The position numbers and the translations under genes are program-made. DNA of 64,000 nucleotides from Octopus sinensis (taxonomy: Eukaryota), in assembly GCF_006345805.1 (NCBI RefSeq), contig NC_043019.1, forward strand, positions 12,833,360 to 12,897,359, read 5' to 3'. The notes under the pieces were generated by a model. That model did no database searches. It was not told where the DNA came from and saw only the letters and a program-made list of their open reading frames with translations. Shown here piece after piece: positions 10,761-59,530 of the stretch (position 1 is the stretch's first letter; each line of letters opens with the position of its first letter).

Positions 10761-10857
10761 ATATATACACACAAATATATACATATATACATGTAGAATT
10801 ACACATACATAATACAAAGGGCTGCAATTAAAAAACAGAAAAGCACAATGGCCTTAC

Positions 10858-11252: not shown

Positions 11253-14730
<3,478 letters not shown>

Positions 14731-20102: not shown

Positions 20103-20447
20103 TGTCAGGCAAACAAATAAATAATTGTAAATAATAGTTATTCCTTCTTGGTATGACAACGCTTGAAGCGTTACATCTACATGCTACATTTGGTAGTGGG
20201 CTACATCATATCGACCTGATAAGGCATGTCATCCGATATGATTCTCCGTATTCTGTATCCGTTACATTGCCCATCATGTCCTCGTGAAAACAATTACGCC
20301 CTTCACCAATCGCCCACAACAATACAAAAACGAAATAATAAATGGATGTGTGTGTGCATGTGCGTGTATGTTTGTGCATGTGTGTGTGTGTGTGTATGTG
20401 TGTGCTTGTGTGTGTGTGTGTGTGCACGTGCGTGTATGTTTGTGCAC

Positions 20448-20480
<33 letters not shown>

Positions 20481-20869
20481 TGCTTGTGTGTGTGTGTGTG
20501 TGCACGTGCGTGTATGTTTGTGCATGTGTGTGTGTGTGTGTGTGCTTGTGTGTGTGTGTGCACGTGCGTGTATGTTTGTGCATGTGTGAGTGTGTGCTTG
20601 TGTGTGTGTGTGAAAAGATAAGTTCAAAGTAGAACAATTCAAGGTGACAAACTTTATTTGGAAATTATGCAATTTCCTGTTGAATTTTCCCTCATTTGTG
20701 GAAATTTACAGTTTTGATGATTCATTATAAATTTGGGACAAAAACACAAAATACCTGGTTTCAAACATTTCATTATTCATATCAGTTATTCAGTCTGTAT
20801 AACCAACTTATTTTTATGCATTCTGCATTATTTTGATTGTATTTCTTTTCACGCCGATTTATTTAAATA

Positions 20870-24594: not shown

Positions 24595-24947
24595 TACATG
24601 TATATCAGGGGTCGCCAAACTTTTCGACCATCGACCCCCTTTTACCCACTTCTTCAACATCGACCACCCTCCTCATTCAAAATATCTTAAAACCCTACCG
24701 TACCGGATACTGATGCTGGCAATTAAAACGTTCGCTAAAATATACATGTACGACAAATTAAGAAATTCTATTGAAGACGACACACTTTTTTTACATTTAA
24801 AACTATATTTTCACGGTTAGAAAATGTGAAAAATCGCATCGTATTGCTGGAATATTTTTTAATTAAAATTGACAGCATCAGTGTGAGGGATGAGCATAGC
24901 GCTAAGTATTTCAAAGCAGTTCATCTGGGCGAGTTGGTCTTTTACAT

Positions 24948-25545
24948 GCCGACCCACTTGGCTATCATCGACCCCCTGTAATTCCTCGCCGACCCCTTGG
25001 CTATCATCGACCCCCTGTAATTCCTCGCCGACCCCTTGGCTATCATCGACCCCCTGTAATTCCTCGCCGACCCCTTGGCTATCATCGACCCCCTGTAATT
25101 CCTCGCCGACCCCTTGGCTATCATCGACCCCCTGTAATTTCTCGCCGACCCCTTGGCTATCATCGATCCCTTGTAATTCCTCGCCGACTCCTTGGCTATC
25201 ATCGACACCCTGTAATTTCTCGCCGACCCCTTGGCTATCATCGACCCCCTGTAATTCCTCGCCGACCCCTTGGCTATCATCGACCCCCTGTAATTCCTCG
25301 CCGACCCCTTGGCTATCATCGACCCCCTGTAATTCCTCGCCGAACCCTTGGCTATCATCGACCCCCTGTAATTCCTCGCCGACCCCGTTGGCTATCATCG
25401 ACCCCCTGTAATTTCTCGCCGACCCCTTGGCTATCATCGATCCCTTGTAATTCCTCGCCGACTCCTTGGCTATCATCGACCCCCTGTAATTCCTCGCCGA
25501 CCCCCTTGGCTATCATCGACCCCCTGTAATTCCTCGCCGACCCCA
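24948..25545. repeat. 39-bp minisatellite, ~15 units, at the end of a hAT-like element starting CAGGGGTCGCCAAAC (24606)
   Basis: Unit CCCCTTGGCTATCATCGACCCCCTGTAATTCCTCGCCGA. Confidence 0.92.
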
Positions 25546-27723: not shown

Positions 27724-27888
27724 ATGGAAGAAAATCCCTTTCCTGATTTGAAGATAAGCAATTATGACTTCCTGGATGAATCAGATGATCGTCGGGTGTG
27801 CCCAAAGTGCGGAAAATCAAGGAAATATTTCTGCTACACCTGTTATAAACCCGTGATAGGAACTGAACATTTAACACCTGTCGTCAAG
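27724..27888 (+). CDS. DTWD1: DTWD1 (tRNA-uridine aminocarboxypropyltransferase 1) coding exon 1
   Basis: MEENPFPDLKI...RRVCPKCGKSRKYFCYTC zinc-binding-type motif. AAG|GTAAAT donor. Acceptor CAG at 27702-27704 implies an upstream non-coding exon. Confidence 0.93.
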
Positions 27889-28467
27889 GTAAATCAATCA
27901 CATCTTTACACATTTTCTTTCAGTTAACATCTGTTGTCCATGCTGGCATGGGTTGGTGTAACCAGAGCTGGCAAGCCAGCAGGATGCACCAGACTCCAGT
28001 CTGATTTGGCATGGTTTCTACAGCTGGATGCCCTTCCTAATGCCAACCACTTACAGCATGTGCTGGGTGCTTTCCACATGGTACTGCATAGGCGCTTTTA
28101 AATGGTACCACACAGGTGCTTTTATGTGATGCCATAAGGGTGGGGTACTTTTATATGTTGTGGCAACACCATAAGTACTTTACACCACCAGAAGGATCAG
28201 TCTTAACACACATGTATGTATACATATTTTACAGTCAATAAAGTACATTTCGAATGTAGTAAAGCTGTAAGGACAGCAGAGACAGAAGGGTGGAGGCTTA
28301 GCTCACATTATAAAAGTGAGGATGACAGTGAAACTGGAAAGAGATAAATTAGTGGTGAGGAGGTACCACAGTGGTTCTGCAAACTTTATGAAGTGTTATC
28401 CACCAGATCTTTCTCTGTTATCAACCATTAACCCATTAGCATTCACAATATTTTTTCAAATGTTGAT

Positions 28468-28808
28468 TGAGACCCCCTTCGGTCATGACTGACCATGGGA
28501 TTGCACCTAGAAAGTTACCCTCCCAGGCACAAGTCCAGGCAAGGTTGTTCATGGAAGACCAGCATTCGCCCATGCATACCGGCCTCCCCTCTCCTCGCTA
28601 CCAGTGTTATCCAAGGGAAAGGCAAAGGGGCCGATACAGCTTGGCACCTGTGACGTCGCAACTCATTTCTACAGCTGAGTGAACTGGAGCAACATGAAAT
28701 AAAATGTCTTGCTCAAGAACACAACACGCAGCCCGGTCCAGGATTCGAACTCACAACCTCACGATCGTATGCTCGACGCTCTAACCACTGAGCCATGCAT
28801 CTTCACAT
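28468..28808 (-). mobile_element. Third tRNA-derived SINE family (partial copy at 5225-5455)
   Basis: Head TGGCTCAGTGG...GGTTGTGAGTTCGAATCC on the minus strand. Body shared with 5225-5455. Confidence 0.75.
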
Positions 28809-28884
28809 GTAATGCTTATTTATTCACATTGGTTTGAATTAATCATGCATTACCTTGTAGCTTCGAGATATCAGTGATGGGATT

Positions 28885-29333
28885 GTATATTGGTTCTTGG
28901 TCTCAAGAATTTGTCTTATGAAGAAAGGCTGAAGACGCTCGACCTTTATTCTCTAGAAAAACGACGACGCCGTGGAGATCTCATTCTTGCTCACAACATC
29001 ATAAGCGGAAAGTGTAACCTCTCGAAAGAGCTGTTCTTCACTCCTGCTCCAGAGCGTCGGCTGCGGGGTCATTCCGAAAAGCTCTATCTGTGACGATTTC
29101 ATCTCAATCGAAGGAGAGGGGCTTTCTCTTGTCCGGGTTGCGGATCCGTGGAATAAGCTGCTAGACGAGGTGGTGAAGATGCCGACGACCGCTCGGTTCA
29201 AAGTCTCCCTTGACCTCAAGTGGCCTGAACTCTTTACATGAACACCCTCCCTGTACATAACTCCATGTCCCCCTACATGGCCTTGATTTTTGCTTTTTGA
29301 GCCAAAAAATTAACTAACTAACTAACTAACTAT
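28885..29333 (+). mobile_element. CR1-like LINE 3' fragment with (AACT)n tail
   Basis: GLKNLSYEERLKTLDLYSLEKRRRRGDLILAHNII...LRGHSEKL. Confidence 0.85.
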
Positions 29334-29473
29334 TTTTACTATGACATTGTCAAGTAGGTGTGAAAGGGCAGATCGGGCCAGTTTAAACATAAAACAAATA
29401 GAAAATTTGGGGCCAGATATGGTCGGTTTATTTGCTAAAGGGTTAATATCGTCTTTGTTCTTTCTTTCAACAG

Positions 29474-29611
29474 CTGCCGATTGCCATTGACATCCTGCGC
29501 CATCCTAGTGAGTGTGCTGGTAAAAGTACTGCCAGCCATGCTGCTGTTTTAGCGCCAGACAACGTCAGTGTCTACACGTATCCTTGTGTGCCAAATTACG
29601 ATAAAGACAAA
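29474..29611 (+). CDS. DTWD1: DTWD1 coding exon 2
   Basis: LPIAIDILRHPSECAGKSTASHAAVLAPDNVSVYTYPCVPNYDKDK. CAG acceptor, GTAAGT donor, phase 0-0. Absent from the ORF track. Confidence 0.93.
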
Positions 29612-29632
29612 GTAAGTATTAATTAGAAATTG

Positions 29633-29982
29633 ATGGCTGTGTGGTAAGTCGCTTGCTTACCAACCACATGGTTCCGGGGTTCAGTCCCACTGCGTGGCAT
29701 CTTGGGCAAGTTTCTTCTACTATAGCCTCGGACCGACAGTTGTCAAGCGATGTTGGGGGGACAAACACAGACACACAAACTTATACACACACATACATAT
29801 ATATATACATATGTACGACAGGCTTCTTTCAGTTTCCTGTCTACCAAATCCACTCACAAGGCTTTGGTCGGCCTGAGGCTACAGTAGAAGGCACTTGCCC
29901 AAGGTGCCGTGCAGTGGGAATTAACCTGGAAACAGGTAGTTGGTAAGCAAGCTACTTACCACACAGCCGCTCCTGCACCTAT
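29633..29982. mobile_element. Two CORE-SINE 5' parts in inverted orientation (29633-29737 +, 29738-29982 -)
   Basis: Head sequences are reverse complements of each other. Confidence 0.85.
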
Positions 29983-30155
29983 ATTTAATTTAATTATTAT
30001 CATAATTAATTTAATTTTTTCCATGTTTTTTTACATGTCAGTATTATCATTCGAAATGATTATGTGGATTAAAAATTTATAAAAACTTTCAACATTTTCT
30101 CTTCTCCATTTTTTTGTAACTGTTAGTTGGGTTTATATAGAATTTTATCCTATAT

Positions 30156-30558
30156 CTAACCGTATCGCCCGGCGTTGCTCGGGTTTGTTTCAGCCCTTTA
30201 GAATTGGAATTTTTGAAAAGTAAAAATTTTGCATTATGTAGCTTGTTATTTTCTTTAAGTGAACATTTTTATCTGGTTGAAATACACCAAAAAATGGCAA
30301 CACAGCAGTCAAAAAATCGTAAAAAATAAGGATTTTCATAGAAAAAAAGCACCTTTTTGATGTAAATAATTTTTGGTGTTAACAAGGTCCAATTTGAATT
30401 TTTTCTTTTATACGGAAGGAAGAGCAAGCCCTCTTCTATCATACTCTCAATTTTGGTCAACTTGTGCCGCAGGGTCTCGGAGGAGATAGTGTTAGTTGAA
30501 GGCTACCAAACCTGCCACACACAGACAACTTCATTTTATATAAATAGAGAGAGAGAGA
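30156..30558 (-). mobile_element. Second Helitron family: same termini, different interior
   Basis: A|TC...TATATAAAATGAAGTTG 5' end, same CCCGAGCAACGCCGGG hairpin, degenerate TTAG end. Confidence 0.7.
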
Positions 30559-30710
30559 TACTCATAACACATTTTTAATTAATACATATATGTATTAATT
30601 AGTGGATGGAAAAGTTGGGTGGACGAACAAATGGACAGTAGGTTGTTTGGTCAGTCATTTACTTGTTCAATTCACTACAAACTTAAATTGGTTGATTCTG
30701 TATTTTCTAG

Positions 30711-31038
30711 GTTGTTTTGGTTTTCCCTGGACCTCAGTCTGTCACACTTGAAGAGTTAAAGGCTGCTGCTGCTGCTGGGTGCATCTCCAATCCACAGACT
30801 TCTTCAGATTCTCAACATGAAATTGGGGACAAACCATATACCCATGTTAACAACGAAGATTCTACAAATGGTTTGAACGATTCTACAAAAGCTACAAAGA
30901 GGAAATCTGATTCAGCAGGTTCTCCAACTCCATGTCGAAAATACACTAAACTGTCCAAGGCGCCATTTGAAAGGGTAATCTTCATTGACTGCACATGGAA
31001 CCAAACCAACCGAATTTCTAAAGATGATCGTCTAAAAG
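30711..31038 (+). CDS. DTWD1: DTWD1 coding exon 3
   Basis: VVLVFPGPQS...RVIFIDCTWNQTNRISKDDRLKG contains the DxTW motif. TAG acceptor, GTAAAT donor, phase 0-1. Confidence 0.93.
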
Positions 31039-31044
31039 GTAAAT

Positions 31045-31660
31045 AATCATCATCATCGTCATCATTGTTCGTTTAACGTCCACTTTCCATGCTGGCATGG
31101 GTTGGACGATTTGACTGAGGACTGGCGAACCAGATGGCTGCACCAGGCTCCAATCTGATCTGGCTGAGATTCTACAGCTTGATGCCCTTCCTAATGCCAA
31201 CCACTCTGAGAGTGTAGTGGGTGCTTTAATGTGCCACCGGCACGAGGGCCAGTCTGGCGGTACTGGCAATGGTCACGCTCAAATGGTGTTTTTTATGTGC
31301 CACCTGCACAGGAGTCAGTCCAGCGGCACTGGCAACGACCTTGCTCAAATGTTTTGTCCACGTGCCACTGGCACAAGTACCAGTAAGGCGACGCTGGTCA
31401 CGATCACGCTCGAATGGTGCTTTTGGAAGCCAGTCAGCTGCTCTTGCAGTGATCCTACCCAGATGGAGCTGTCAGCGCTCCATTGGCACGCGTGCCATTC
31501 ATCGAATTTGGTTTGATTTCTATTTCATTTGCCTCAACAGGTCTTTGCAAGCAGAGTTTTGTGTCCAAAGAAGGAAAGGTACGCATAAGTGGGCTGGCTT
31601 CAACCCTGGTAAAGGCCACGGGTTATGGTCTCACTTGTCTTGTCGGGTCTTCTCCCACAC
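31045..31660 (-). mobile_element. RTE 3' end starting 6 nt after the DTWD1 exon 3 donor
   Basis: Tail, core and diverged VNTR. Confidence 0.8.
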
Positions 31661-32367
31661 AGATGCCATTAAGTTATTGTTGTTGTTGATGCTGTCATTG
31701 TTATTGATACTCCTGATATTGTTATTAAGCCTCAGATCAACTTTGAGCAAGCCTACAATCAAAAGCATTCCAGCCTTGACCATCATGTCTCTATATTTTC
31801 TTTTTTCAGAATATGTAAAATTACCTTATCCAGTGCCCCACTTTCTTTACTTTAGACAGTAGGTTGTGTTTTGAGGGAAACTTGACTGCTAGTTCTAGCA
31901 GAACAAACGACCACATAGAGGAATTCGTCATTGTTTTTATTGGTTGGCCCTGATCCTGTAGACCAGTGATTCCCAACCAGTGGTATGCAAGGGCTTTCCA
32001 GGTGGTGCGCCTGATGCTATGTGTGACCTTGAGGGGCACATGCGTATAAAATGTGCCATGTGCTCATTAATAAATGACAGTTGCTCGTTTGGTTTCTGGT
32101 GCATGTCTTCGTTCTCTCTGGGCTGGGTAGAGGCTCACTGGGGGCAAGTGAGGCAAGCATGCCATTACAAGTTAATATTTTCTTCATAAAAATGTTTACT
32201 GCCTTACACGAGGTAATCTAGCGGTGTTTTGCTACTTTTATATCCATAATTTTCTTATTGTGTATATTATTATTATTAGTATTAATATTATTTTGTATAT
32301 TTTTTTATTTTTATATTTTTTTATTTCTTGATTGATTAATTTTTCAACTTTTCCACAGGATTTAATA

Positions 32368-32909
32368 TTGGGTTGTCCTGAAAGTTTGTGCCGATTTATA
32401 GTAGCTTACCTTTCGACTTATTTTAGAACATGGTTGAGTCCATAAAATAGGATTTGACTAAGCTACATTTTCACAGAAGAAGGTTTATGTTCCTGTAACC
32501 TGTGTTAATTCTGTCACCCTTTAAAGTGAAAGATAAGAAAGTTCATTTTTGGCACTTGATGCTTTGGGAACCAGATAAAAATTACTGCAGCTCGGCTGGG
32601 ATGTGTTACCCCACCCTCCATATTCACCAGATATTGCTCCTTCGGATTCCCACTTATTCAGGTCTCTGCAGAATAGTCTTAATGGTAAAAATTTCAATTC
32701 CTTGAATGGCATAAAAAGATACCTTTATGAATTATTTGTGATGAAACCATCTCAATTCTGGGAAGAGGGTGTTTTCAAGTTAAAGGAAAGATGGAGACGC
32801 ATTGTGCAACAAAATGGTTCATATTTGGTTGATTTAAAATGTAATGGCAAGTATTTATTGACCCTTTTCTTTCCTTTAAAAATCGGCACGAACTTTCTGG
32901 ACAACCCAA
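32368..32909 (+). mobile_element. Internally deleted mariner (Tc1/mariner) element
   Basis: TIRs TTGGGTTGTCC...GCCGATTT, TA duplication, transposase C-terminus GWDVLPHPPYSPDIAPSD...RWRRIVQQNGSY. Confidence 0.92.
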
Positions 32910-32946
32910 TAACATGCATTATACATATATATATATATATATATAC

Positions 32947-33023
<77 letters not shown>

Positions 33024-33032
<9 letters not shown>

Positions 33033-33263
33033 TAAATGAAAGAATGGAGTCGAACGAAGATGTTAACAAAATTCCTTTTTCTCGACATATGTTTCGAAGA
33101 CCACATGGTTTCATTTGAAAGGAATAAAGGGTGTATGATGCAATCTTCTCATCAGGAAAGAAAATTGCATCATATACCATGTTGTCTTCAAAACATATGT
33201 CGAGAGTAAAGGAATTTTGTTAACATCTTCGTTCGACTCCATTCTTTCATTTATTCGTATATA
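33024..33263. mobile_element. Fold-back MITE (~80-bp TIRs plus inner hairpin) in (TA)n
   Basis: GAATAAATGAAAGAATGGAGTCGAACGAAGATGTTAAC... with reverse complement at 33190-33263. Confidence 0.8.
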
Positions 33264-33586
33264 ACACACAAATTTCTGCAAATGAACCCGGAGTTTCTAC
33301 CCTTGGACAGGTCGCTTCAACCGTGTTTCTGACGCGAATTTGCTACCCTGGTATCGGTTCAACGCATTTTCCATGCTGATGATAAACATAGGATAATTCA
33401 TTCACTTATAGAAATATATATATATATATTTGTATATATAATAAACTGAGATGATAAAAGGAATGAACAATTATGATATGAACTTCAATAGCTTTTAGCT
33501 GTTTCTGCTGTAAGATGCAGTGCACCCACATTTGAGTACTTCAGTATCACCCTGTTGCTTCTTCAGAGCTTGAAACATATGTACAT

Positions 33587-33624
<38 letters not shown>

Positions 33625-33650
33625 CTTGTTTCTCTTTCTTCTCTTACTAG

Positions 33651-33928
33651 GAATTCGTTGTGTGGAGATGAAGACCAGGCACACCAAATTCTGGCGCCAC
33701 CAGCGGGACAAACCAAACACCTATTTGAGTACTGTTGAAGCAATCTACTATTTTCTACGGGACTACCATACGTATTTTATCAGTGACGAGTACCACGGAG
33801 AATATGACAACCTCCTCTTTTTCTTTTGCTTTATGTATCAAAAGATACGGTGTATGTACGATGGAGGACACCATCTCCTTGCTTATAAACAAAAAGACAA
33901 AAAAGAATCTGAAGAAACACAATCATAG
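33651..33928 (+). CDS. DTWD1: DTWD1 last coding exon; total CDS 909 nt / 302 aa
   Basis: [28 protein letters not shown]...[16 protein letters not shown] stop at 33926-33928. Confidence 0.94.
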
Positions 33929-36263: not shown

Positions 36264-36319
36264 TTACAAGATGATGGCAATGAGAACTGCAATGCAAAGG
36301 CTGGTTCCTAATGGATAAC
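36264..36319 (-). CDS. Unnamed protein last exon: hydrophobic C-terminal tail GYPLGTSLCIAVLIAIIL*
   Basis: Poly-T tract + GCAG acceptor, phase 1 in frame with exon 3, TAA stop directly after an 11-aa hydrophobic run. Confidence 0.78.
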
Positions 36320-36460
36320 CTGCAAAAAAAAAAAAAAAAAAAGAATAATAAAACATGTTTTGTTTTTTAATAAAAAAAACAGTAATATCTGCCAGGCTTA
36401 ACCCTTTTGATACCAACTTGTTTAAAACTGCTTTTGTTTCTATGGTACAAATTTCTTGTT

Positions 36461-36686
36461 TTAACCCTTTAGTATTTAAACCGGCCATATCCGGCCAAAA
36501 TAGCTAATCTGTTTTATGTTCAAACTGACCAGATCCAGGCTCTCACACCTACCCTACAATGTTATTCTACATTAAGTAATTACACCATCAAGATCTTGAA
36601 GATATGAGATATGCATGATTAATTCAAATCAATGTGAATCAATAGGCATTATATTTAATAGAATAATCTGAACACTAAAGGGTTAA
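36461..36686. mobile_element. piggyBac-like MITE (TTAA|CCCTTT...AAAGGG|TTAA); relatives at 36747-36960, 29345-29445 and 38423-38652
   Basis: TTAA target duplication and CCC/GGG termini. Confidence 0.8.
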
Positions 36687-37324
36687 AGGGCTCTCAAAAT
36701 TTTCTTCTATCAAAATTTCTTGTAAATTTATGTCTGAAACACTAGCTTAACCCATTAGCATTTAAACCGGCCATATCCGGCCAAAAGTATTCTGTCTGTT
36801 TTATGTTCAAACTGGTCTCTTACACCAACCCTACAATATCGTTCTAGAAATTAACAGCTACCTCATCAAAATCTCATAGCTACAAGATAATGCATGATTA
36901 GTTCAAAACAATGTGGATAAAAAAAGGATTAATTTTGGCAGAATAATGCGAACACTAAATAATGACCAACTTATTTGACTAAATTTTTCAGTGTTTTCAA
37001 AATTAATTTAACCCTTTTGATACCAACCCAGCTGAAACCAGCTCTGGCTCTGTAGTACAAATGTCTTGTTTTCCTAAATTTTGAATTAAAATCTTCCACT
37101 AAACCTTAGTCACAATTGTGGTTGGTTAGCAAGCTACTTACCATACAGCCACTCCTGCTAATTTATGTTCCAAACCCCAGTTAAGTAATAACAATTATCT
37201 TAATTGAGACAAAGACGATATATTCAAGGGCCATGGTGAAAGCAAAGGGTTGTCAATTTATATTGTAAACATGGCCAATAAAGAACAACAATAAATGTAA
37301 TTATTATTATTATTATTAAAATGA

Positions 37325-37551
37325 AAAGCTGGCAGAAACGTTAGCACGCCGGGCGAAATGCTTAGCGGTATTTCGTCTGCGTTATGTTGTGAGTTCAAAT
37401 TCCACCGAGGTCAACTTTGCCTTTCATCCTTTCGGGGATCAATAAATTAAGTACCAGTGAAACATTGGGGGTGGATGTAAACAACTAGTCCCTTCTCAAC
37501 AAAATTTCAGGCCGTGCACCTTTAATAGAAAGGATTGTTATAATAATAATA

Positions 37552-37560
<9 letters not shown>
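37325..37560 (+). mobile_element. Short SINE-like family (GAGCTGGCAGAA...GAGTTCAAATTCC...CATCCTTTCGGGG) with (TAA)n tail; fragments at 15545, 22100, 26870 and 27305
   Basis: Dispersed copies, B-box-like GTTCAAATTCC. Confidence 0.7.
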
Positions 37561-37587
<27 letters not shown>

Positions 37588-37621
37588 CAATAATAAGTAG
37601 TAGTAGTAGCAGCAGCAGTAC

Positions 37622-37951
37622 CTGAAGTAGTAGTAGCAGCAGTAGTAGTAGTAGTATCAGTAGCAGCAGTAGTAGTAGTAGTAGTCTTTAGCTGTATTTC
37701 AATTGTTCCTAGAGTTTCCGGCATTAGTATTTGAGGTTCCACATTGAATTTCCATTTTAAACATTCTTTTCTGACACTCCGTATCCAGAAAGTAGAACTG
37801 TTGCCACCGTTTGTAACTTTAAAATCTTCGTGATCAAGGCATGTTTTGTCACATTCATACCTTCGGTTTGCACAACTCCAGTGAAAGGGAGTTCTTAGAT
37901 TAGGAATTTCTTCAGTGCTAAGAAGTACACTTTGTCCCAATTCCACTGGTT
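37622..37951 (-). CDS. Unnamed protein exon 3: 4-Cys, Ig-like-looking domain + Thr/Ala stalk
   Basis: TTTATTTCAG acceptor, CAG|GTACTG donor, 330 nt phase 1-1, stop-free. KPVELGQSVLLS...HWSC...YECDKTC...NSSTFWIRSVRKECLKWKF...TTTTTTAATDTTTTTAATTTS. Confidence 0.8.
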
Positions 37952-38034
37952 CTGAAATAAAGAAGTAATAGGTAGAATTGGATACAACTTAGTCACCCAT
38001 AACAGATTCATTGTCGTTAGAACCTGCCACTCAC

Positions 38035-38082
38035 TCGCATGCTCTTTGGTTTTGTGCCAGGGAGAAGTAATACAGATGCCAT
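38035..38082 (-). CDS. Unnamed secreted/GPI-like protein, coding exon 2 (YGICITSPWHKTKEHA)
   Basis: Pyrimidine tract + TAAG-AAG acceptor, GTGAGT donor, 48 nt phase 1-1. Completes the signal peptide. Confidence 0.75.
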
Positions 38083-38689
38083 CTTCTTAGAAACACAAAT
38101 GCAAAAGAAGTATTTAGCTAAAAGTAAGCCATTGTAGGTGGCATTTGTTAGGCCTGAGAGCCTTTCACATGCTCTCCTACTCTGGGATGAGGTGGTCTCT
38201 GAAGAAGCTAGAGGTACATGGCTTGTGAAAACCAAACTAGCCATGTACAGGGGTACTATCAGTCAGGTGGGCCCTTGAATACATCATCTTTGTCTCAATT
38301 AAGATAAGTGTTATTACTTAACTGGGGCTTGGAATATAAATTAGCATAGAATTATGGAAGGTTTTAATTTAGATCACTTTAACCCTTTTGTTACCATACT
38401 TGTTGAAGCACACTACATTTGTTTAACCCTTTCGTTACTGTATTTATTTTGAGATGCTCTGTCTTTCTTTCAATTAATTTTAAATATAACAAAGAATTTA
38501 GTAAAATAACTTAGTTATCATTAAGCTTGTGTGAGGAACATAAATTGTGACTAAGGTTTAGTGGAAGATTTTTATTCAAAATTTAGGAAAACAAGACATT
38601 TGTACTACAGAGCCAGAGCCAGTTTCAGCTGGGTTGGTATCAAAAGGGTTAAATTAATTTTGAAAACACTGAAGAATTTAGTCAAATAG

Positions 38690-38968
38690 CGTGGCTGTCT
38701 GCCAGCCTCGTCTGGCACCTGTGTCGGTGGCACATAAAAAACACCATTCGAGCGTGACCATCTGCCAGCCTCGTCTGGCACCTGTGTCGGTGGCACATAA
38801 AATCACCCACTACACTCTCGGAGTGGTTGGCGTTAGGAAGGGCATCCAGCTGTAGAAACACTGCCAGATCTGACTGGCCTGGTGCAGCCTTCGGGCTTGC
38901 CAGACCCCAGTTGAACCGTCCAACCCATGCTAGCATGGAAAGCGGACGTTAAACGATGATGATGATGA
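38690..38968 (+). mobile_element. RTE 3' end, 2 VNTR units
   Basis: Core + (GAT)n. Confidence 0.82.
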
Positions 38969-39165
38969 AGTTTGTCATTATTAAGAAAGTATTTCAAACG
39001 TAAATTTACAAGAAATTTTGATGGAAGAGTACAGTAATGGACTTTGGGTAGATCTACATGTGCACCACAGCTCAGTTCTCAGTTCCGTCTTCTTAATCAC
39101 TGTCCTCTAGGTCACAACAAAGGAATTTAATACTAGCTGCCCTTGGGAACTACTATATGCTAATG

Positions 39166-39384
39166 CAGTGCTTTTCAACCTTTTTGCTGGAGCGGAACCC
39201 CAAGAAAATATTTCACTGGCTCGAGGAACCCCTGTGCAATAATTTAATTGTCTTATGCACACATATCTGCATAGGAGAATTAAAAATTACTGTCGATTTT
39301 AGCATTTTTGTAACTTCTTGCAGAACCCCTGGACTGTACTGGCGGAACCCTAAGGTTCCGTGGAACCCTGGTTGAAAACCACTG
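39166..39384. mobile_element. hAT-like MITE, perfect 8-bp TSD TGCTAATG
   Basis: CAGTG...CACTG termini. TSD at 39158-39165 and 39385-39392. Confidence 0.88.
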
Positions 39385-39399
39385 TGCTAATGAGCTCAT

Positions 39400-40300
39400 T
39401 TTCAGAGTGGAATCTGCAGTGGAATTAGAAAAGAAATTTCAGGTATGGAAGCAAAACGTGGTATCAAAAGGCCTTAAAGTTAACTTGGCAAAAATCAAAA
39501 GTTCTAGTAAGTGGGAAAACAGACAGGACCTCACACCCATCAGGTAAACGATCCTGCTTAACATGTAGGAAAGGTTATACACCCAATGAATGCTATGGGC
39601 ACAGAAGAGGTGAATTGGATTCACAGGAAGGTGAACACAGAAATTAGGGTTTGCATGTGAAAGATGCATAAGAGCGATGAATATTAAGGAGACACGATAA
39701 TTAGCTTCTGTTACCTTGGTGACCTAATTAATAATGTTCTGAAAATATAGTTGCTAGAATAAGAATAGGATGGAGAAAGTTCTGGAAGTTATAACCTCGG
39801 TTATCGGCAATGCTACATGGTAGGGAGACATGGAGCCTGAATGCAGAGGATAGGCAAGGACTAGAAAAGAATAAAGCAAGTATACTTTATCGGATGGGCA
39901 ATATCAGTGTGCATCGAAAACAAAGAGCTAAAGTACTGAGAGAGAGAGAGAGTAAACATAACAGGAAGTAGATCACCCACAACAATAACAACAACAACAA
40001 TTGGCACAACACAAGCACCAGCAACTATAACAACAACCACAACAAATCTTATGACATGACGAGGATCTACTCCACAGAGTTACCCTTCATCAAGAGAGTA
40101 TTTATCCCACCCCAAATTGATAGTGAAACAGAAACAAAAGATTTCCTTAGCTAGAAATAGACTCCGACACATCTTAGACAGACTGGACTGGTTTGTTCAT
40201 GTGATGTGTATGGATGAAGGCAGCTGCTTCAAGAAGTGCTTAAAGTGGATGGAACTTGTAGAAGTGAAGATTGAGCTTCACAGAAGAGATGACAAATGAC
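39400..40300 (+). mobile_element. Degenerate RTE reverse-transcriptase C-terminal fragments
   Basis: WKQNVVSKGLKVNLAK, FCYLGDL, ARIRIGWRKF, MLHGRETW, RLDWFVHVMCMDE in broken frames. Confidence 0.75.
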
Positions 40301-40589
40301 TGAGTTGATTGACAAATGACTGAGATGATTGACAAATGACTGAGATGACTGACAAATGACTGAGATGATTGACAAATGACTGAGCTGATTGGCAATTCAC
40401 TGTGCTCGCAAAGACCTGTCCATCACATTAAAAGACAATATCCTAACTGCACACACACACACACACACACACACAGACTTGCCACTTTCTTCACTATGGC
40501 TACTTTAACCCTTTAATATTCAGATTACTCTTTCAAATGTAATGCTTATTTATTCACATTGCTTTGACTTTGAAGACCCGACAAATGCA

Positions 40590-41012
40590 GTGAGTTCATG
40601 GCTCGCAGGACAGACTGCTGCGCTGACCTTGGATCGTAGAGTGACCCGCTGTTCTTGAGGAGACCTGTTGAGTCAAGTTCGTTAAGACACCCATGCTGGT
40701 GACACGTAAAAGCACCGTTCGAGCATGGCAGTTACTAGTGACGCCGACTGGCGTCCATGTCGGTGACACGTAAAAGCACCAACCGATCGTGGCCGTTTGC
40801 CAGCTTGCTCTGGCTCCTGTGCTGGTGGCACATAAAAAGCACCCACTACACTCACGGAGTGGTTGGCGTTAGGAAGGGCATCCAGCTGTAGAAACACTGC
40901 CAAATCAGACTGGAGCCTGGTGCAGCCTCCATGGCTTGCTTACCAGACCCCGGTCGAACCGTCCAACCCATGCTAGCATGGAAAACAGACGTTAAATGAT
41001 GATGATGATGAT
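40590..41012 (+). mobile_element. RTE 3' end (subfamily of 7021/7345)
   Basis: Shared upstream segment, core and tail. Confidence 0.8.
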
Positions 41013-41764
41013 TCTGTTTATACTTGTAACCCATTCTGCCCCTCCAAGCATTACCCATATCTCATTCCTCTAACACCCAGTTCTCCATCACTCCTCTATC
41101 AATGGCACTACTCAGTGGCTGTATTCACTTGGAAACAGAATTGGCACATATTACTCCACACCGTTTTCTTTTGCGCTACCACTGACCTCCTTCTGCCAGA
41201 ACAACTTCCACTCCTTATTTCCATTATCCTTCCTTCCTTTTCCCATACTATCTTCACTGATCGGATCCTTTCTATGCCTTCATCTCCCTTCTCTGCCATA
41301 CTTCATCTTAACACCTCACATCTCGACCCTCATTCTCAGCTCCCTCTTATATCCATGATCATGCTCCAGTCACTGTAGCCACCCATATGTAACCCTATAT
41401 CTCCCACTCTACCCCTCCTACACCTACATTATTCCCTTAACTTCTCTCTCTTACCATAGCCCTTCTACATACTCAAATTTTCCATCAACTGCACCTCCAG
41501 CCTTGTCCATCACTCACTACATAAAGATAGAATGTGATTAAAAACTATGAGTGGTGAAGAGTAAAAAACAGAAGACAGAATTGAAAATAAAATTTAAAAT
41601 TAAAAATTTAAAATTGAAAATTAGTTCAAAAAGATAAAAAGGGTTTTTAAATATATTTACCATTTTGGAAGATTTTATAGGATTTCGCAACTCCCTTGTC
41701 TGTAAAAAGATGAAAACATGATTTTTGATCAACAGATTTTAATCAACAATTTGTGTTAGAATGA

Positions 41765-42200
41765 TTAGTAATTCATCATGGCTTGGCTTCGCAAACGAAG
41801 ATCAGGAAGGCTGTCCACGTTGCGTGCATGCACACTCATCACTGACAAGTATGATATGGGAAAGGCAGGTCCATGTGCAGTGTCCACAGACAGAGGTAAC
41901 ATCTGGTGTGGTGTCAGAGGCGGCTCGCGCCTTCCTCCTGCGTCTCTTGTCTTTAAGTACGTCTCTTCTTTGTTCCTCAAACTTGCTGACTGCGTTGAAG
42001 ATTGTGTGGCGCCAGACATCACAGTCCACAGCCAGGTCTGACCAGCATTGGTGGTTAATATGACATGCTGTTAGAGACTTCTTGAGGCAGTCTTTGTAGC
42101 GCCTCCTCGGAGCTCCTCTCACACAGTGGCCAGTGGAGAGTTCGACAAACAGGGCAATCTTTGGAAGGCGATGGTTCTCCATTCTGGAGACATGCTCTGC
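41765..42200 (-). mobile_element. Second RTE lineage (BovB-like) ORF2 C-terminus
   Basis: RMENHRLPKIALFVEL...RGAPRRRYKDCLK...W...CGHCTWTCLSHI Cys-rich end. Confidence 0.8.
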
Positions 42201-42202
42201 CC

Positions 42203-42847
42203 ATATATATAAACGGCAAAATGTCTGTGTGTGTGTCCTTTATACAAATCCACAATTTTTTAGTTAGAGGGCTCACACTTTCTATGGTCATTCAAAACCG
42301 TCCAAGGGTGGTCATGCACATCTTTACATTACCCCAGTCACCCCACAAATCTCTCTATATATAAACGGCAAAATGTCTGTGTGTGTGTCCTTTATACAAA
42401 TCCACAATTTTTTAGTTAGAGGGCTCACACTTTCTATGGTCATTCAAAACCGTCCAAGGGTGGTCATGCACATCTTTACATTACCCCAGTCACCCCACAA
42501 ATCTCTCTATATATAAACGGCAAAATGTCTGTGTGTGTGTCCTTTATACAAATCGACAATTTTTCAGTTAGAGGGCTCACACTTTCTATGGTCATTCAAA
42601 ACCATCCAAGGGTGGTCGTGCACATCTTTACATTTCCCCAGTCACCCCGCAAAGCCATTTAAAAATCAATAGAAGTGACTTTTTTGTGAATTTTCTATCC
42701 AAAACCCAATCAAAACACCTGAAACTTGATATGCCAATTGAATGCCAGCTAGCTGTATGCAATTGGTTGGAGATTTGGACAGTACTCGCGTTTATGTGCG
42801 CACGCACGCAGCTGTATATGCATGCACTAGCACTATGACCCGGCTAG
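42203..42847 (+). mobile_element. Helitron-like element whose 5' 152 bp is present three times head-to-tail
   Basis: A|TCTCTCTATATATAAACGGC restarts at 42350 and 42502. Ends CTAG|T; hairpin weak. Confidence 0.65.
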
Positions 42848-43292
42848 TCATTAATAATTGAACAAATCACATTTGTATTGATTGAGTGACCTTGGCCAGA
42901 GGTCTGATTGGTCAGTCATGGACAGAGGTCAGTGATTGCTAACAAAATCTTGATCGTCACAATCTAACAATCTGGTTTTGATTCTTTGGTCTTTTGGAAC
43001 TGCCAAATATTCCTGCAACACTCGAGTCACATTCTTTGGGATCTTTCCAAAAATTTTTTCCTTAATTCTTGCCTGGATACTTAAACTTTATTGTGAACAA
43101 TGAATCAGTACAATTTTTGAAAACAGTCGAAAATTACATCTCAGACACTTAATAATCTTTGTATCTGACAGTCATGTACGTCACAGACGAATGGACCTCA
43201 CATCAAAACAATGATGATGATGAGGATACAAGCACCGTTCTAATATGACCATAAATAAATAAACATGATGAATAAATAAACATTAGGTATTT

Positions 43293-43682
43293 CTCTCTTT
43301 TACTTGTTTCAGTCATTTGACTGCAGCCATGCTGGAGCACCGCCTTTAGTCGAGCAAATCAACCCCAGGACTTATTCGTTGTAAGCCTAGAACTTAATTC
43401 TATCTTACTCTTTTGCCGAACCGCTAAGTCACGGGGACGTAAACACACCAGCATCAGTTGTCAAGCGATGTTGGGGTGACAAACACAGACACACACACAA
43501 ATATATATATACATATATACGATGAGCTTCTTTTCAGTTTCCATCTACCAAATCCACTCACAAGGCTTTGGTCGGCCTGAGGCTACAGTAGACGACGCCC
43601 AAGGTGCCATGCAGTGGGACTGAACCCGGAACCATGTGGTTCGTAAGCAAGCAACTTACCACACAGCCACTCTTGCACCTAT
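43293..43682 (-). mobile_element. CORE-type SINE
   Basis: Reverse-complement match. Confidence 0.85.
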
Positions 43683-43737
43683 GAAAGCAAAAACGAAAAA
43701 ACAAGCAGAAAAATCTATTCCTGAAAATGATATAAAT

Positions 43738-44259
43738 CAGTGGTTCTCAGCCCCACTCCCTTTTTTTTTGCCTATGGACCCCTTTGATTATTATTTGATT
43801 CTGGTTGATGCCCCCCCCCACCGTTGCCACTTGTAGCTTAAAAACAAATTTTATAGATGCTTTTTTCAAAACCCCTAATTTAACATATTAAATCTTTAGG
43901 GTTTAGCTTATTCTGTCTCAAATGTAATGCTTATTTATTCACACTGTTTTGAATTAATCAGAAATTATCTTATAGCTTCTAGATTAATATAATGTGATCG
44001 TTTATTTTTAGGTTGACATTGTAGGGTAGATGTGAGGGACCTGATCTGGCTGGTTTGTACGTAAAACAGGTGTTGGCCTGTGTAGGGTGAACTATGTAAA
44101 ATGTTGGGGAAAGAAACTTAAACATTTCTTGCAGCGAATACATCTGAAGCAAAATATTATTTCACAGACCCTTAAAATATTACTGTAGATCCCCAGTTTA
44201 CTATTTTGCTTGCACGTGACCCCTAAAAGTCTCACATGGACCACAGCTGAGAACCACTG
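43738..44259. mobile_element. hAT-like MITE (CAGTGGTTCTCAG TIRs), degenerate 8-bp TSD
   Basis: ATATAAAT / GTGTAAAT flanks. Confidence 0.65.
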
Positions 44260-44364
44260 GTGTAAATGATAATTGAAACAATTATTTTTAGTAGAAAAAT
44301 AAATGTTAACAGAAAAATAAAATAAAAAAAGAAAAAAACGAAATAAAGAAAATAAAATACTCAC

Positions 44365-44404
44365 AAATACACACTAAAAACAAACAGTTCCGAAGAATGT
44401 TCAT
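44365..44404 (-). CDS. Unnamed secreted/GPI-like protein, coding exon 1 (MNILRNCLFLVCI)
   Basis: TTTTCCAG|ATC ATG acceptor with A at -3, strong GTGAGT donor, phase 1, hydrophobic signal-peptide core. Confidence 0.75.
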
Positions 44405-46261
44405 GATCTGGAAAATAATATATATAAATCAAATTTTTTTGAAAAAATTTATCAATGGCCAGCATATTAAAAAATACTTTTAAAGGTTAAATTTATAAAC
44501 AACATATAAACAAGGGCAAAAGAAAAAAATTTCTAATGCCAAATATGCCGAAACTAGACACATCGTCTATAACCATATAATTTATCACTATAAGCATGTG
44601 TCTCGAAGAAAGCCGACAGAATTTTCTAAAAAATTCCGTTATCATATCGGACCCGATTTCAGAGTTAATTCATAAGAACCTTCTCTTCATCAGTGATAAA
44701 TGCGGCAAAGAAATAAATGAAATACTTACTTATACCCATGGAAGAAGCAAACACTAACTCATGAGCACAATTAAGTACCCCAAATATATCCAAAATAGAA
44801 ATTCTCTAGCCCATTCGAGACACGTGAAATTCGAACTGAAAACTTTCGTAGATTGAGAGAGTCCAGAAGTGAACACTATTGAATTTACATCTAATATAGG
44901 ATAAAATTTTTTCCAAAAAATTTTATCAATGGTTAGCTTATTAGAAAAATACCTTTAAAGGTTAAATTTAGAAACAACTTATAAAGAAAGGTAAAAGAAA
45001 AAAATTTCTAAAGCCAAATATGCCGAAACTAGACACATCGTCCATAACCACATAATTTATCACTATAAGCACGCATCTCTTATATTTACAACATATAAGT
45101 TGTATATATATGTATATATATATAATAACAAAATAATAAATAAAACATATGCATATATACATAAATATATGTACGTACCCACATCGATATGTATATATAC
45201 ATGCATATATGGGTACAGGACACCAAAACAACGTCGAACACAATGAGAAATTAAATAAATATATGTATGTATATATGTATACACACACACATATGTACAT
45301 ATATATGTATACACACACACATATGTACATATATATGTATACACACACACACATGTAAAAACTAACACTTCCTCTTGGAAATAAAAAAAAAGTAAAGGCT
45401 TTTTATGAAAAGTAACGATAGATATATACAATTAGATGAACTGAGGTAGAAATAAAAGTAATAAAAGTCATTATTGTGAATTGTTAAAGAGATTTAAAAG
45501 CATACCGGTTTCGTGACATGCATATGTGGGCACAGACCGTCATGAAACGTGTACAACAAAAAAGTACAAAGCACGTGTACATGGAACATGAACTATTCTT
45601 TCGAAGAAAGAAAGACACAAATAGAAAACAAAGCAAAGAACGACCCTTCATCAGTTGTTGGCTGTTTCTCTAGTCTCGTATTTTGAGCATTTAACTACAA
45701 TATACGCTTTCGATAAAACAGTTGCTTCCGCAAAGCAAATTAAATAAAATTTGAGATTTTACAGCATCGTTCTATCCCTCTCTCTGTAATCACTACAAAA
45801 CAATGAAGAGGGCACAAACACAAACTTTTTGAATTTATCATAACCTACCCGTCGAGGTATGGTATTTTTCAACGTAACGGTAAATAAATATTTCCTTCAA
45901 ATTTCATGCATTGTTCATCTTTCACATTCTACAGTATGCAATTATAACAAATTTTTATCGTTGCAACTGCTGACTCTGACATTTCATTATATTGTTTACT
46001 AATCAATTTCTCCCGCTACAATTGGTAACCCTCGACTTTAACTAAAATCTTAACCGTTACAAACGTTTTTTTTTTCTTCCTCTTAAAACTCACACAAGTC
46101 TATAAATTTTGGATGTTTTTTGAAAGATACTATATTTTATCATCAGAATATATATACTTTCTCACACAACAAGTGAGATATATTTATTTTAAATCGTTGG
46201 TCTTTCTTCCCCCTCCCCACCTAATTAGTTTGGGCGTGATTTTAATTTTTTTTTTTCCTTG

Positions 46262-59430: not shown

Positions 59431-59530
59431 NNNNNNNNNNNNNNNNNNNNNNNNNNNNNNNNNNNNNNNNNNNNNNNNNNNNNNNNNNNNNNNNNNNNNN
59501 NNNNNNNNNNNNNNNNNNNNNNNNNNNNNN
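59431..59530. other. Assembly gap (100 N)
   Basis: Seen directly. Confidence 1.

What the first reader, a model, noticed from the sequence alone, without database searches (positions are those of the whole stretch)
36264..44404. Hidden 4-exon gene for a small GPI-like cell-surface protein with an unrecognised Cys/Trp (Ig-like?) domain
Four all-phase-1 exons with strong splice sites join without stops into 157 aa: MNILRNCLFLVCIYGICIT|SPWHKTKEHAKPVELGQSVLLSTEEIPNLRTPFHWSCANRRYECDKTCLDHEDFKVTNGGNSSTFWIRSVRKECLKWKFNVEPQILMPETLGTIEIQLK-TTTTTTAATDTTTTTAATTTSG-YPLGTSLCIAVLIAIIL. That is a signal peptide, an ~90-aa domain (4 Cys, NSS sequon, GQSVxL..W..STFxIxxV pattern), a mucin-like stalk encoded by (ACT/GCT)n, and a hydrophobic tail with no cytoplasmic part. 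The domain lacks the canonical B-strand Cys of Ig folds and I cannot name a family. It may belong to a cephalopod-specific surface recognition, adhesion or immune family.
Basis: partly seen in the sequence, partly recalled or inferred. Interest (0 to 1): 0.8.

Follow-up and report, generated by a model that had tools for sequence, protein, structure and literature searches.

The report
Annotated octopus Ig-like surface protein gene

Summary
The four stretches splice in frame to the 157 aa quoted. The window is Octopus sinensis chromosome CM016881.1, and the gene is already annotated as RefSeq LOC115223473 (uncharacterised; isoforms X1 and X2).

Exons 1, 3 and 4 match isoform X2 exactly. The real exon 2 is a 39-nt mini-exon at 41699-41661 that encodes the conserved first strand, 'YKIFQ'. 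Three results support this: the RefSeq model, a 13-bit gain against a family profile, and an identical 39-nt mini-exon in a paralogue.

The domain is not an orphan. About 24 clusters of uncharacterised proteins from O. sinensis, O. bimaculoides, O. vulgaris and Argonauta hians carry 1-4 tandem copies, followed by a membrane segment. No Pfam model reaches threshold.

With the family alignment, AlphaFold2 gives an 8-strand beta-sandwich (pLDDT 93.6). Foldseek matches only Ig V-type domains (TM 0.55-0.68). Strand B never has a Cys, so the canonical disulfide is absent. C42/C46 are invariant or nearly so, and C35/C72 co-vary.

GPI anchoring is plausible for X2 but untested. X1 reads through the weak exon-3 donor into a microsatellite and ends differently.

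Verdict: an ordinary, already annotated gene, and a member of an undescribed octopod-restricted Ig-like family. Modest interest.

The parts
44365..44404 (-). Exon 1 (coding part): ATG plus the first part of the signal peptide, MNILRNCLFLVCI(Y). It ends in phase 1 with donor GTGAGT.
   Evidence: Identical to the N-terminus of RefSeq X1 and X2. The paralogue LOC115225372 has an equivalent 46-nt phase-1 first exon.
41661..41699 (-). True exon 2: a 39-nt phase 1-1 mini-exon encoding (Y)KGVAKSYKIFQN(E). It carries the end of the signal peptide, the likely cleavage region, and strand A of the Ig-like domain (family motif Y-x-I-x-Q).
   Evidence: Located from the RefSeq protein. It adds 13 bits and extends the match to the family HMM from position 10 back to position 2. 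The paralogue has a 39-nt mini-exon with the same phase and near-identical flanks, ttcatcttttacag|...|gtaaac. It has the best acceptor among the candidates.
38035..38082 (-). Unsupported; most likely intronic sequence that happens to be open with AG/GT borders.
   Evidence: Absent from both RefSeq isoforms. It has no counterpart in the family profile. It is one of 12 comparable chance candidates in the interval. Its acceptor has a competing AG 3 nt upstream.
37686..37951 (-). Exon 3, first part: strands A'/B to G of the non-canonical Ig-like domain (PVELGQ...IEIQLK). Includes W33, C35, C42, C46, C72, W75, F77 and the N-x-S sequon.
37622..37685 (-). Exon 3, last part: the Thr/Ala-rich stalk TTTTTTAATDTTTTTAATTTS(G), encoded by an (ACT/GCT)n microsatellite. 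The weak donor CAG|GTACTG lies inside the repeat.
   Evidence: Some paralogues also have Thr-rich stalks (P0029, P0031).
37485..37621 (-). Read-through extension used by RefSeq isoform X1 (intron 3 retained): ...GTAAATTTTYYCCYYYYYYYYYYIIIIITILSIKGARPEILLRRD*, translated from (ACT)n/(TAT)n/(ATT)n microsatellites.
   Evidence: ORF 37485..37946.
36264..36319 (-). Exon 4 (coding part, isoform X2): (G)YPLGTSLCIAVLIAIIL*. This is the hydrophobic C-terminal tail with nothing after it. The acceptor is t17gcag.
   Evidence: Identical to the X2 C-terminus.

Best explanation
The locus is the annotated Octopus sinensis gene LOC115223473.

Gene model. The correct coding structure is exon 1 (44404-44365), a 39-nt mini-exon (41699-41661), the domain-plus-stalk exon (37951-37622) and, in isoform X2, a short tail exon (36319-36264). 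All junctions are phase 1.

Product. It encodes a 154-aa precursor made of:
- a short signal peptide;
- one ~95-aa non-canonical immunoglobulin-like domain, in which the B-F disulfide is replaced by hydrophobic residues;
- an invariant or near-invariant C-x3-C pair (C42/C46) and a co-varying C35/C72 pair;
- one conserved N-glycosylation sequon;
- a Thr-rich, probably O-glycosylated stalk;
- a short hydrophobic C-terminus.

Family. It is a dispersed single-domain member of an octopod-restricted family. Other members carry 1-4 tandem copies of the domain plus a transmembrane segment, and many of them share one other chromosome.

Likely mechanism (inferred). The protein enters the secretory pathway and is held on the outer face of the plasma membrane, either by a GPI anchor (X2) or by a short membrane segment (X1). 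There it presents one Ig-like domain on a glycosylated stalk for extracellular protein-protein recognition.

Shown here: the gene model, family membership and the fold prediction. Inferred: secretion, the type of anchor and the recognition role. The confidence given applies to the shown parts (gene model, family membership, Ig-like fold); the surface-recognition mechanism alone I would put near 0.5 and GPI anchoring near 0.3.
For: Gene and annotation. There are 0 mismatches to CM016881.1, and the CDS span is 36264-44404.

Exon 2.

Family:
- 37 hits at E<=1e-3 and 17 at E<=1e-10, several with 2-4 matched stretches.
- member sequences with a signal peptide, tandem domains and a transmembrane segment.
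- all looked-up members are from O. sinensis, O. bimaculoides, O. vulgaris or Argonauta hians, apart from one unnamed Logan contig. At least seven O. sinensis loci lie on the 21.3-Mb chromosome CM016885.1.
- alignment with W33 and C42 invariant, and E41, C46, V54, S61, W75, F77 and L94 conserved in at least 90%. Our protein keeps all of them.

Fold:
- pLDDT 93.6, pTM 0.85, 8 strands.
- the top 50 Foldseek hits are all Ig V-type domains, with probability 1.00 and TMq 0.46-0.68 (mostly 0.55-0.68).
- sub-threshold I-set and Ig_3 matches.
- the five best PDB profile hits are myotilin, titin, obscurin, CD2 and CD79b Ig domains, at E 0.1-0.8.

Cysteines. C35 and C72 are both present in 13 domains, both absent in 13, and split in 2+2. 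Position 21 is never Cys.

Tail. Several paralogues also end at the hydrophobic segment (P0010, P0014, P0016, P0029). Others continue into short basic cytoplasmic tails.
Against: - No transcript reads could be inspected. Exon use rests on the RefSeq models and on homology.
- No orthologue was found among annotated proteins of O. vulgaris or O. bimaculoides, so purifying selection on this copy is untested.
- The signal-peptide h-region is only about 8 residues (CLFLVCIY) with the true exon 2, against 11-15 in paralogues. Secretion is therefore not certain.
- The hydrophobic tail of X2 is only 11-14 residues. The residues near the candidate omega sites are imperfect: S136-G-Y has a bulky residue at omega+2, and A131/A132 are followed by Thr.
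- RefSeq lists three transcripts for the read-through X1 and one for X2, so the GPI-like tail may be the minor form.
- Foldseek TM-scores are moderate and rmsd is 4-6 A.
- The disulfide pairing is inferred from co-variation, not from coordinates.
- Function is entirely inferred.
Confidence: 0.8

Rival explanations
1. Exon 2 at 38082-38035 is the constitutive exon or a major alternative, and it gives a longer signal peptide.
For: The exon is open, phase-compatible and has a consensus donor, AG|GTGAGT. It would give a more canonical h-region, LFLVCIYGICIT. All exons are phase 1, so cassette use is formally possible.
Against: It is absent from RefSeq X1 and X2. It removes the conserved strand A, costing 13 bits against the family HMM. 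The paralogue's gene plan shows a 39-nt mini-exon at the corresponding place. It is one of 12 similar chance candidates, its acceptor is weak (8 of 14 pyrimidines), and there is an upstream competing AG. Including both exons would split the domain.
Confidence: 0.05
2. The mature protein is not GPI-anchored. It is either a type I membrane protein that uses the X1 read-through tail (a Tyr/Ile-rich segment followed by KGARPEILLRRD), or it is released as a soluble glycoprotein because the short tails do not hold it in the membrane.
For: RefSeq lists three X1 transcripts and one X2. The exon-3 donor GTACTG is weak and lies in a microsatellite. Multi-domain paralogues are plain transmembrane proteins with basic cytoplasmic tails. 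The X2 tail looks like a truncated version of those transmembrane segments, and its omega region is imperfect.
Against: The X1 tail is a translated microsatellite, which is unlikely to be conserved. Its strongly hydrophobic core is only about 10 residues (IIIIITILSI). X2 and at least four paralogues end exactly at a hydrophobic segment preceded by small residues, which is the classical GPI-signal layout.
Confidence: 0.4
3. This copy is a decaying or non-functional dispersed paralogue that is transcribed and annotated but no longer makes a working surface protein.
For: It is a singleton away from the family's main chromosome. Its signal-peptide h-region is shortened, with Lys where paralogues have Cys-Leu. 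It has a 5-residue insertion and a diverged F-G region, and the HMM alignment stops at position 78 of 93. Its stalk and both alternative tails come from microsatellites. No orthologue is annotated in sister species.
Against: The reading frame is intact across four exons with good splice sites. Every invariant or near-invariant family residue and the N-x-S sequon are kept. AF2 folds this very sequence with high confidence.
Confidence: 0.15
4. Exon 3 derives from ankyrin repeats, so the product would be an intracellular protein fragment rather than an extracellular domain.
For: Ank_3 matches residues 49-69 at E=0.06. Thirteen of the 37 hits are long proteins matched in several stretches only around TPFHWSCANRRYEC. 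The three whose sequences were read (P0015, P0035, P0036) are ankyrin-repeat proteins.
Against: None of the 29 paralogous domains hits Ank. The family consensus RPVVWKCxNYKYECD is less ankyrin-like. AF2 predicts an all-beta fold with pLDDT 93.6 and no helices. Foldseek finds only Ig domains. The similarity is confined to about 25 residues.
Confidence: 0.01

Closest known systems
Unnamed octopod family of 'uncharacterized protein LOC...' genes, for example O. sinensis LOC115225115, LOC115229017 and LOC115225372; O. bimaculoides LOC106867739 and LOC106881157; O. vulgaris CAI9743493; Argonauta hians GAB1602345
   Same: They share the same ~93-aa domain at 28-47% identity in the alignment, with W33, C42, C46, W75, F77 and the N-x-S/T sequon. 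The exon plan is the same: a 39-nt mini-exon plus a phase 1-1 domain exon. All have an N-terminal signal peptide and a C-terminal hydrophobic segment.
   Different: Ours has a single domain, a shorter signal-peptide h-region, a 5-residue insertion before strand G, and a microsatellite-encoded Thr stalk. It lies alone on another chromosome. Many relatives have 2-4 domains, true transmembrane segments with basic tails, or an extra Cys-rich domain.
Immunoglobulin superfamily V/I-set domains that lack the canonical disulfide: the CD2/CD58/CD48 (SLAM) family and the CEACAM N-domains (comparison from established knowledge)
   Same: Ig-like sandwich with the strand-C Trp but no B-F disulfide. These are cell-surface recognition molecules. 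Their families mix GPI-anchored and transmembrane members, or isoforms produced by alternative 3' exons, and they show lineage-specific tandem expansion. CD2 is among the best, though non-significant, PDB profile hits.
   Different: No significant sequence similarity (E 0.4). The C-x3-C pair and the C35/C72 pair are not features of those families. Nothing here tests homology beyond the fold, or function.
Thy-1 (CD90): a small GPI-anchored protein with a single V-type Ig domain (from established knowledge)
   Same: Overall layout: a signal peptide, one Ig-like domain of about 100 aa, N-glycans, a C-terminal GPI signal and no cytoplasmic part.
   Different: Thy-1 keeps the canonical disulfide and has no mucin-like stalk. 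There is no sequence similarity, and GPI anchoring is unproven here.
Pfam I-set (PF07679) and Ig_3 (PF13927)
   Same: These are the weak best matches: paralogue P0003 scores 23.6 bits against a cut-off of 23.7, and 7 of 30 and 4 of 30 family domains match at E<1.
   Different: No member reaches the gathering score, and our own sequence does not match at all.

Membership tests
Octopod LOC115225115-like domain family (unnamed, not in Pfam) | Significant match of the domain to a family profile built without the query | tested here: met
   102.8 bits, E 3e-34, HMM positions 2-78 of 93. phmmer E-values reach 1e-67 to paralogues.
Octopod LOC115225115-like domain family (unnamed, not in Pfam) | Conserved residues W33, E41, C42, C46, V54, S61, W75, F77 and L94 | tested here: met
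   All are present in our sequence.
Octopod LOC115225115-like domain family (unnamed, not in Pfam) | Exon plan: phase-1 signal exon, 39-nt phase 1-1 mini-exon (Y-x-I-x-Q), phase-1 domain exon | tested here: met
   Window 41699-41661 compared with L002 13267-13305: same length, phase and flanks. Only one paralogue was examined.
Octopod LOC115225115-like domain family (unnamed, not in Pfam) | N-terminal signal peptide and C-terminal membrane segment | tested here: inconclusive
   Both are present by eye, but both are shorter than in paralogues: h-region about 8 aa, tail 11-14 aa. No predictor was available.
Immunoglobulin superfamily (Ig-like beta-sandwich) | Predicted or solved fold superposes on Ig domains | tested here: met
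   AF2 pLDDT 93.6, pTM 0.85, 8 strands. Foldseek PDB: the top 50 hits are all Ig V-type domains, TMq up to 0.68, probability 1.00, E from 4e-4.
Immunoglobulin superfamily (Ig-like beta-sandwich) | Sequence match to a curated Ig model at its gathering score | tested here: not met
   Our protein has no Ig hit. The best paralogue scores 23.6 against 23.7 bits for I-set. PDB profile hits are at E 0.1-0.8.
Immunoglobulin superfamily (Ig-like beta-sandwich) | Canonical strand-B to strand-F disulfide packed on the strand-C Trp | tested here: not met
   The Trp is invariant (W33). The strand-B position is I, T, V or A and never Cys in 30 domains. The conserved inward-facing strand-F residues are W75 and F77. 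Some accepted IgSF domains, such as CD2 domain 1, also lack this disulfide, so this does not exclude the fold.
Immunoglobulin superfamily (Ig-like beta-sandwich) | Domain exon bounded by phase-1 introns | tested here: met
   Exons 2 and 3 are both phase 1-1.
GPI-anchored proteins | Cleavable N-terminal signal peptide | tested here: inconclusive
   MNILR / CLFLVCIY / KGVA|KS by eye. The h-region is short. SignalP was not available.
GPI-anchored proteins | C-terminal hydrophobic tail with no cytoplasmic residues | tested here: met
   X2 ends ...SLCIAVLIAIIL*. This does not hold for isoform X1.
GPI-anchored proteins | Omega site: small residues at omega and omega+2, a 5-10 residue spacer, then the tail | tested here: inconclusive
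   Candidates by eye only: A131/A132 (omega+2 is Thr) and S136 (omega+2 is Tyr). No GPI predictor was available.
GPI-anchored proteins | Release by PI-PLC, or lipid-anchor chemistry | not testable with these tools
   Requires an experiment.
Ankyrin repeat proteins | Helix-turn-helix repeats matching Ank models | tested here: not met
   Ank_3 at E 0.06-0.1, for our sequence only. The model is all-beta.

The most novel reading that the evidence does not exclude
The family is an octopod-specific, rapidly diversifying set of non-canonical Ig-like surface receptors. It has 1-4 domains, both GPI-like and transmembrane members, and a cluster on one chromosome. It would serve self/non-self or cell-cell recognition, for example innate immunity, sucker or skin chemotactile surfaces, or neuronal wiring. 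That would make it an independent invention comparable to the vertebrate CEACAM and SLAM families. LOC115223473 would be its minimal, Thy-1-like member, with the anchor type switched by alternative splicing.
Probability: 0.15. Interest if true: 0.55.

Novelty: new member of a known kind. Interest (0 to 1): 0.3.

Why it matters

What is worth keeping is the family. About two dozen clusters of octopod proteins labelled 'uncharacterized' share a domain that no Pfam model captures. With a family alignment it folds confidently into an Ig-like sandwich with an unusual cysteine pattern.

Lineage-restricted, tandemly expanded Ig-like surface proteins are typical raw material for immune and cell-recognition systems. 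Cephalopods are already known for large lineage-specific gene-family expansions such as the protocadherins. A defined domain model would improve annotation of octopus genomes and give expression atlases a handle on these genes.

Nothing here shows a function, so the matter is of modest interest.

Tried and rejected
1. Word-indexed protein search with the 157-aa protein and with the 30-domain alignment. Both found only the gene's own RefSeq cluster. The paralogues appeared only in the exhaustive phmmer search.
2. AF2 on the single sequence gave a useless model, pLDDT 37.6. It was superseded by the alignment-based model.
3. The ankyrin-repeat lead was rejected. The similarity is confined to our sequence, and the fold is all-beta.
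4. A search for paralogues inside the window by tblastn and by six-frame HMM found none.
5. No repeat covers the exon itself. There is only a 77-bp inverted repeat pair flanking that exon and exon 3.
6. Literature searches on the LOC identifiers and on octopus-specific or IgSF gene families found nothing on this gene or family. The one octopus-specific-gene paper I checked concerns unrelated genes.
7. tRNA and Rfam scans of the window found nothing.
8. Pfam scans of two transposon-looking ORFs in the window (41805-42182 on the minus strand, 32603-32989 on the plus strand) gave no hit. Their identity remains a guess.
9. The exact-sequence contig look-up for X2 found nothing, because only the longest product of a gene is indexed. 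The look-up for X1 worked.

Full report
**1. Observation**

They translate without stops into exactly the 157 residues quoted.

**2. Source and annotation**

A protein search with the 157-aa product returned one cluster: 'uncharacterized protein LOC115223473' of Octopus sinensis. It has isoform X2 (XP_029649930.1, 154 aa) and isoform X1 (XP_036368504-6, 181 aa).

The contig look-up placed X1 on GCA_006345805.1 CM016881.1, with an annotated CDS span of 8141 bp. Window 26264-54404 is the exact reverse complement of that stretch, with 0 mismatches in 28,141 bp. The annotated span maps to 36264-44404, which is exactly the finding's coordinates. The gene is therefore not hidden. It is a RefSeq model without a name.

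**3. Exon 2 is wrong**

Between them it reads (Y)KGVAKSYKIFQN(E) instead of (Y)GICITSPWHKTKEHA(K). That peptide is encoded at 41699-41661. It is a 39-nt phase 1-1 exon with acceptor ttcatctttttacag and donor gtaaat.

Three independent results favour it:
- **Family profile.** A family HMM built without this gene scores the RefSeq version at 102.8 bits, aligned from HMM position 2. The mini-exon supplies the conserved 'Y-K-I-x-Q' first strand.
- **Paralogue gene plan.** LOC115225372 has the same plan: a 46-nt phase-1 first exon, then a 39-nt mini-exon (ttcatcttttacag|GT TCC ... CAA AAT G|gtaaac), then the domain exon. A similar mini-exon precedes its second domain.
- **Chance expectation.** The 6.4 kb between exon 1 and exon 3 contains 170 open, phase-compatible AG..GT candidates of 30-200 nt. 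The RefSeq exon has the best acceptor.

With the true exon the h-region is only about 8 residues (CLFLVCIY), against 11-15 in paralogues. I could not look at RNA-seq reads.

**4. The domain belongs to a family**

An exhaustive phmmer search of 1.84 billion representatives with the exon-3 domain gave 37 hits at E<=1e-3. Seventeen were at E<=1e-10 and four at E<=1e-30, several with 2-4 matched stretches.

About 24 of the hits are true relatives. Of the 20 whose source I looked up, all come from O. sinensis, O. bimaculoides, O. vulgaris or Argonauta hians, except one unnamed Logan contig, and every named one is labelled uncharacterised or hypothetical. Four relatives were not looked up.

The other 13 hits are long proteins matched in several stretches only around TPFHWSCANRRYEC. 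The three I read are ankyrin-repeat proteins. I treat this as chance similarity, for these reasons:
- none of the 29 paralogous domains hits Ank;
- the family consensus is less ankyrin-like;
- the predicted fold is all-beta.

Family architecture is a signal peptide, then 1-4 tandem copies of a ~93-aa domain, then a membrane segment. Some members carry a second Cys-rich domain type before the membrane segment. The membrane segment is either followed by a short basic tail or is the very C-terminus. At least seven O. sinensis loci lie on one 21.3-Mb chromosome, CM016885.1. Our gene sits alone on CM016881.1, and the window contains no second copy.

**5. Fold**

No Pfam model reaches its cut-off. 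The recurring weak matches are Ig models: I-set at 23.6 against 23.7 bits for P0003, I-set in 7 of 30 domains, and Ig_3 in 4 of 30. A profile search of PDB sequences puts the Ig domains of myotilin, titin, obscurin, CD2 and CD79b on top, at non-significant E-values of 0.1-0.8.

AF2 on the single sequence failed, with pLDDT 37.6. With the 30-domain alignment it gave pLDDT 93.6 and pTM 0.85, with eight beta strands. Foldseek against the PDB returned only Ig V-type domains among the top 50: VHH, VL, VH, vNAR, CD8-alpha and TCR V. TMq was 0.46-0.68, mostly 0.55-0.68. Probability was 1.00 and the best E was 4e-4.

The strand-B position (T21 in ours) is I, T, V or A in all 30 domains and never Cys. 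W33 is invariant. W75 and F77 are the conserved residues of strand F.

The cysteines behave as two pairs. C42 is invariant and C46 is present in 29 of 30 (C-x3-C). C35 and C72 are both present in 13 domains, both absent in 13, and split in 2+2. A subset lacking them has an F-C-D...C pair instead. The pairing is inferred from co-variation. I could not read the model coordinates, and related sequences are not independent observations.

**6. Stalk and tails**

The stalk TTTTTTAATDTTTTTAATTTS is encoded by an (ACT/GCT)n microsatellite. The exon-3 donor (CAG|GTACTG) lies inside that repeat and is weak.

RefSeq X1 reads straight through it into (TAT)n/(ATT)n and ends ...YYCCYYYYYYYYYYIIIIITILSIKGARPEILLRRD. 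Three transcript accessions encode X1 and one encodes X2.

X2 ends ...TTTSGYPLGTSLCIAVLIAIIL. It has 11 strongly hydrophobic residues, nothing after them, and small residues upstream (A131, A132, S136, G137). This is the general layout of a GPI signal, and four paralogues end the same way. However, the tail is short and the omega+2 positions are not ideal. No GPI or signal-peptide predictor was available. I rate GPI anchoring of X2 as plausible, at roughly one in three. It remains untested.

**7. Likely function**

The most likely reading is a small, glycosylated, membrane-tethered extracellular protein that presents a single non-canonical Ig-like domain for protein-protein recognition.

The nearest functional analogies come from general knowledge and were not tested here. 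One is Thy-1, a single Ig domain on a GPI anchor. The others are the CD2/CD58/CD48 and CEACAM families, which have Ig V-like domains without the canonical disulfide, both GPI and transmembrane forms, and lineage-specific expansion.

The main rivals are:
- a non-GPI anchor, or release as a soluble protein;
- a decaying dispersed paralogue, suggested by the short signal peptide, the diverged F-G region, the microsatellite-derived tails and the lack of an annotated orthologue, but countered by the intact frame and full retention of conserved residues;

**8. Novelty**

The gene is already annotated. The fold is a known kind. I found no Pfam model for the family and no mention of it in the papers I could search. 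It appears restricted to octopods, as far as a single-sequence search can show.

I file it as a new member of a known kind and score its interest as modest.

Noticed in passing
window 27724-33928 (+): The neighbouring annotated gene on the opposite strand, tail to tail with LOC115223473, encodes a 302-aa product with a Pfam DTW domain (PF03942), according to the contig look-up.
   Followed up: no
window 10854-11252 (-): An ORF whose C-terminal part (CPVCTTTRRPFYCASCVNTGQF...) matches the first 31 positions of Pfam ATG14 (E 3e-4, below the cut-off). It may be the first coding exon of an ATG14/Barkor-like gene, preceded by a Thr/Ser-rich low-complexity run.
   Followed up: partly
window 44428-44604 and 44901-45079: A ~178-bp direct repeat (89% identity) lies just upstream of exon 1, in the presumed promoter or 5' region of the gene.
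   Followed up: no
It could be the ends of a small mobile element, or chance.
   Followed up: no
window 41802-42182 (-) and 32603-32992 (+): Two ORFs look, from memory only, like transposon remnants. The first has a basic tail resembling the end of a non-LTR retrotransposon ORF2 and lies about 100 bp upstream of true exon 2. The second has a 'YSPDIAPSD.HLF' motif like a mariner transposase C-terminus and lies inside the DTW gene. Pfam gave no hit for either.
   Followed up: partly
window 37485-37700 (-): The exon-3 donor sits inside a compound (ACT)n(GCT)n(TAT)n(ATT)n microsatellite. Repeat-length variation could therefore change both stalk length and the splice versus read-through choice between isoforms X2 and X1.
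   Followed up: partly
window 24859-25476, 12800-14489 and 20206-20672: Long minisatellite or microsatellite arrays give spurious long ORFs on both strands. Examples are a ~39-nt unit reading GVGEELQGVDDSQ, and (CTGT/CTAT)-type arrays reading [10 protein letters not shown]. An assembly gap of 100 N lies at 59431-59530.
   Followed up: no
proteins P0020, P0023, P0026, P0029, P0037 (paralogues, not in the window): Some family members carry a second, different Cys-containing domain after the Ig-like one (KPKIE...C.Y.V.A.CS.P.T.I.C...), in one or more copies. I did not characterise it.
   Followed up: no
protein P0034 (not in the window): One hit joins C2H2 zinc fingers directly to a copy of the domain. 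This is probably a gene-model fusion artefact in a neighbouring-gene region.
   Followed up: no
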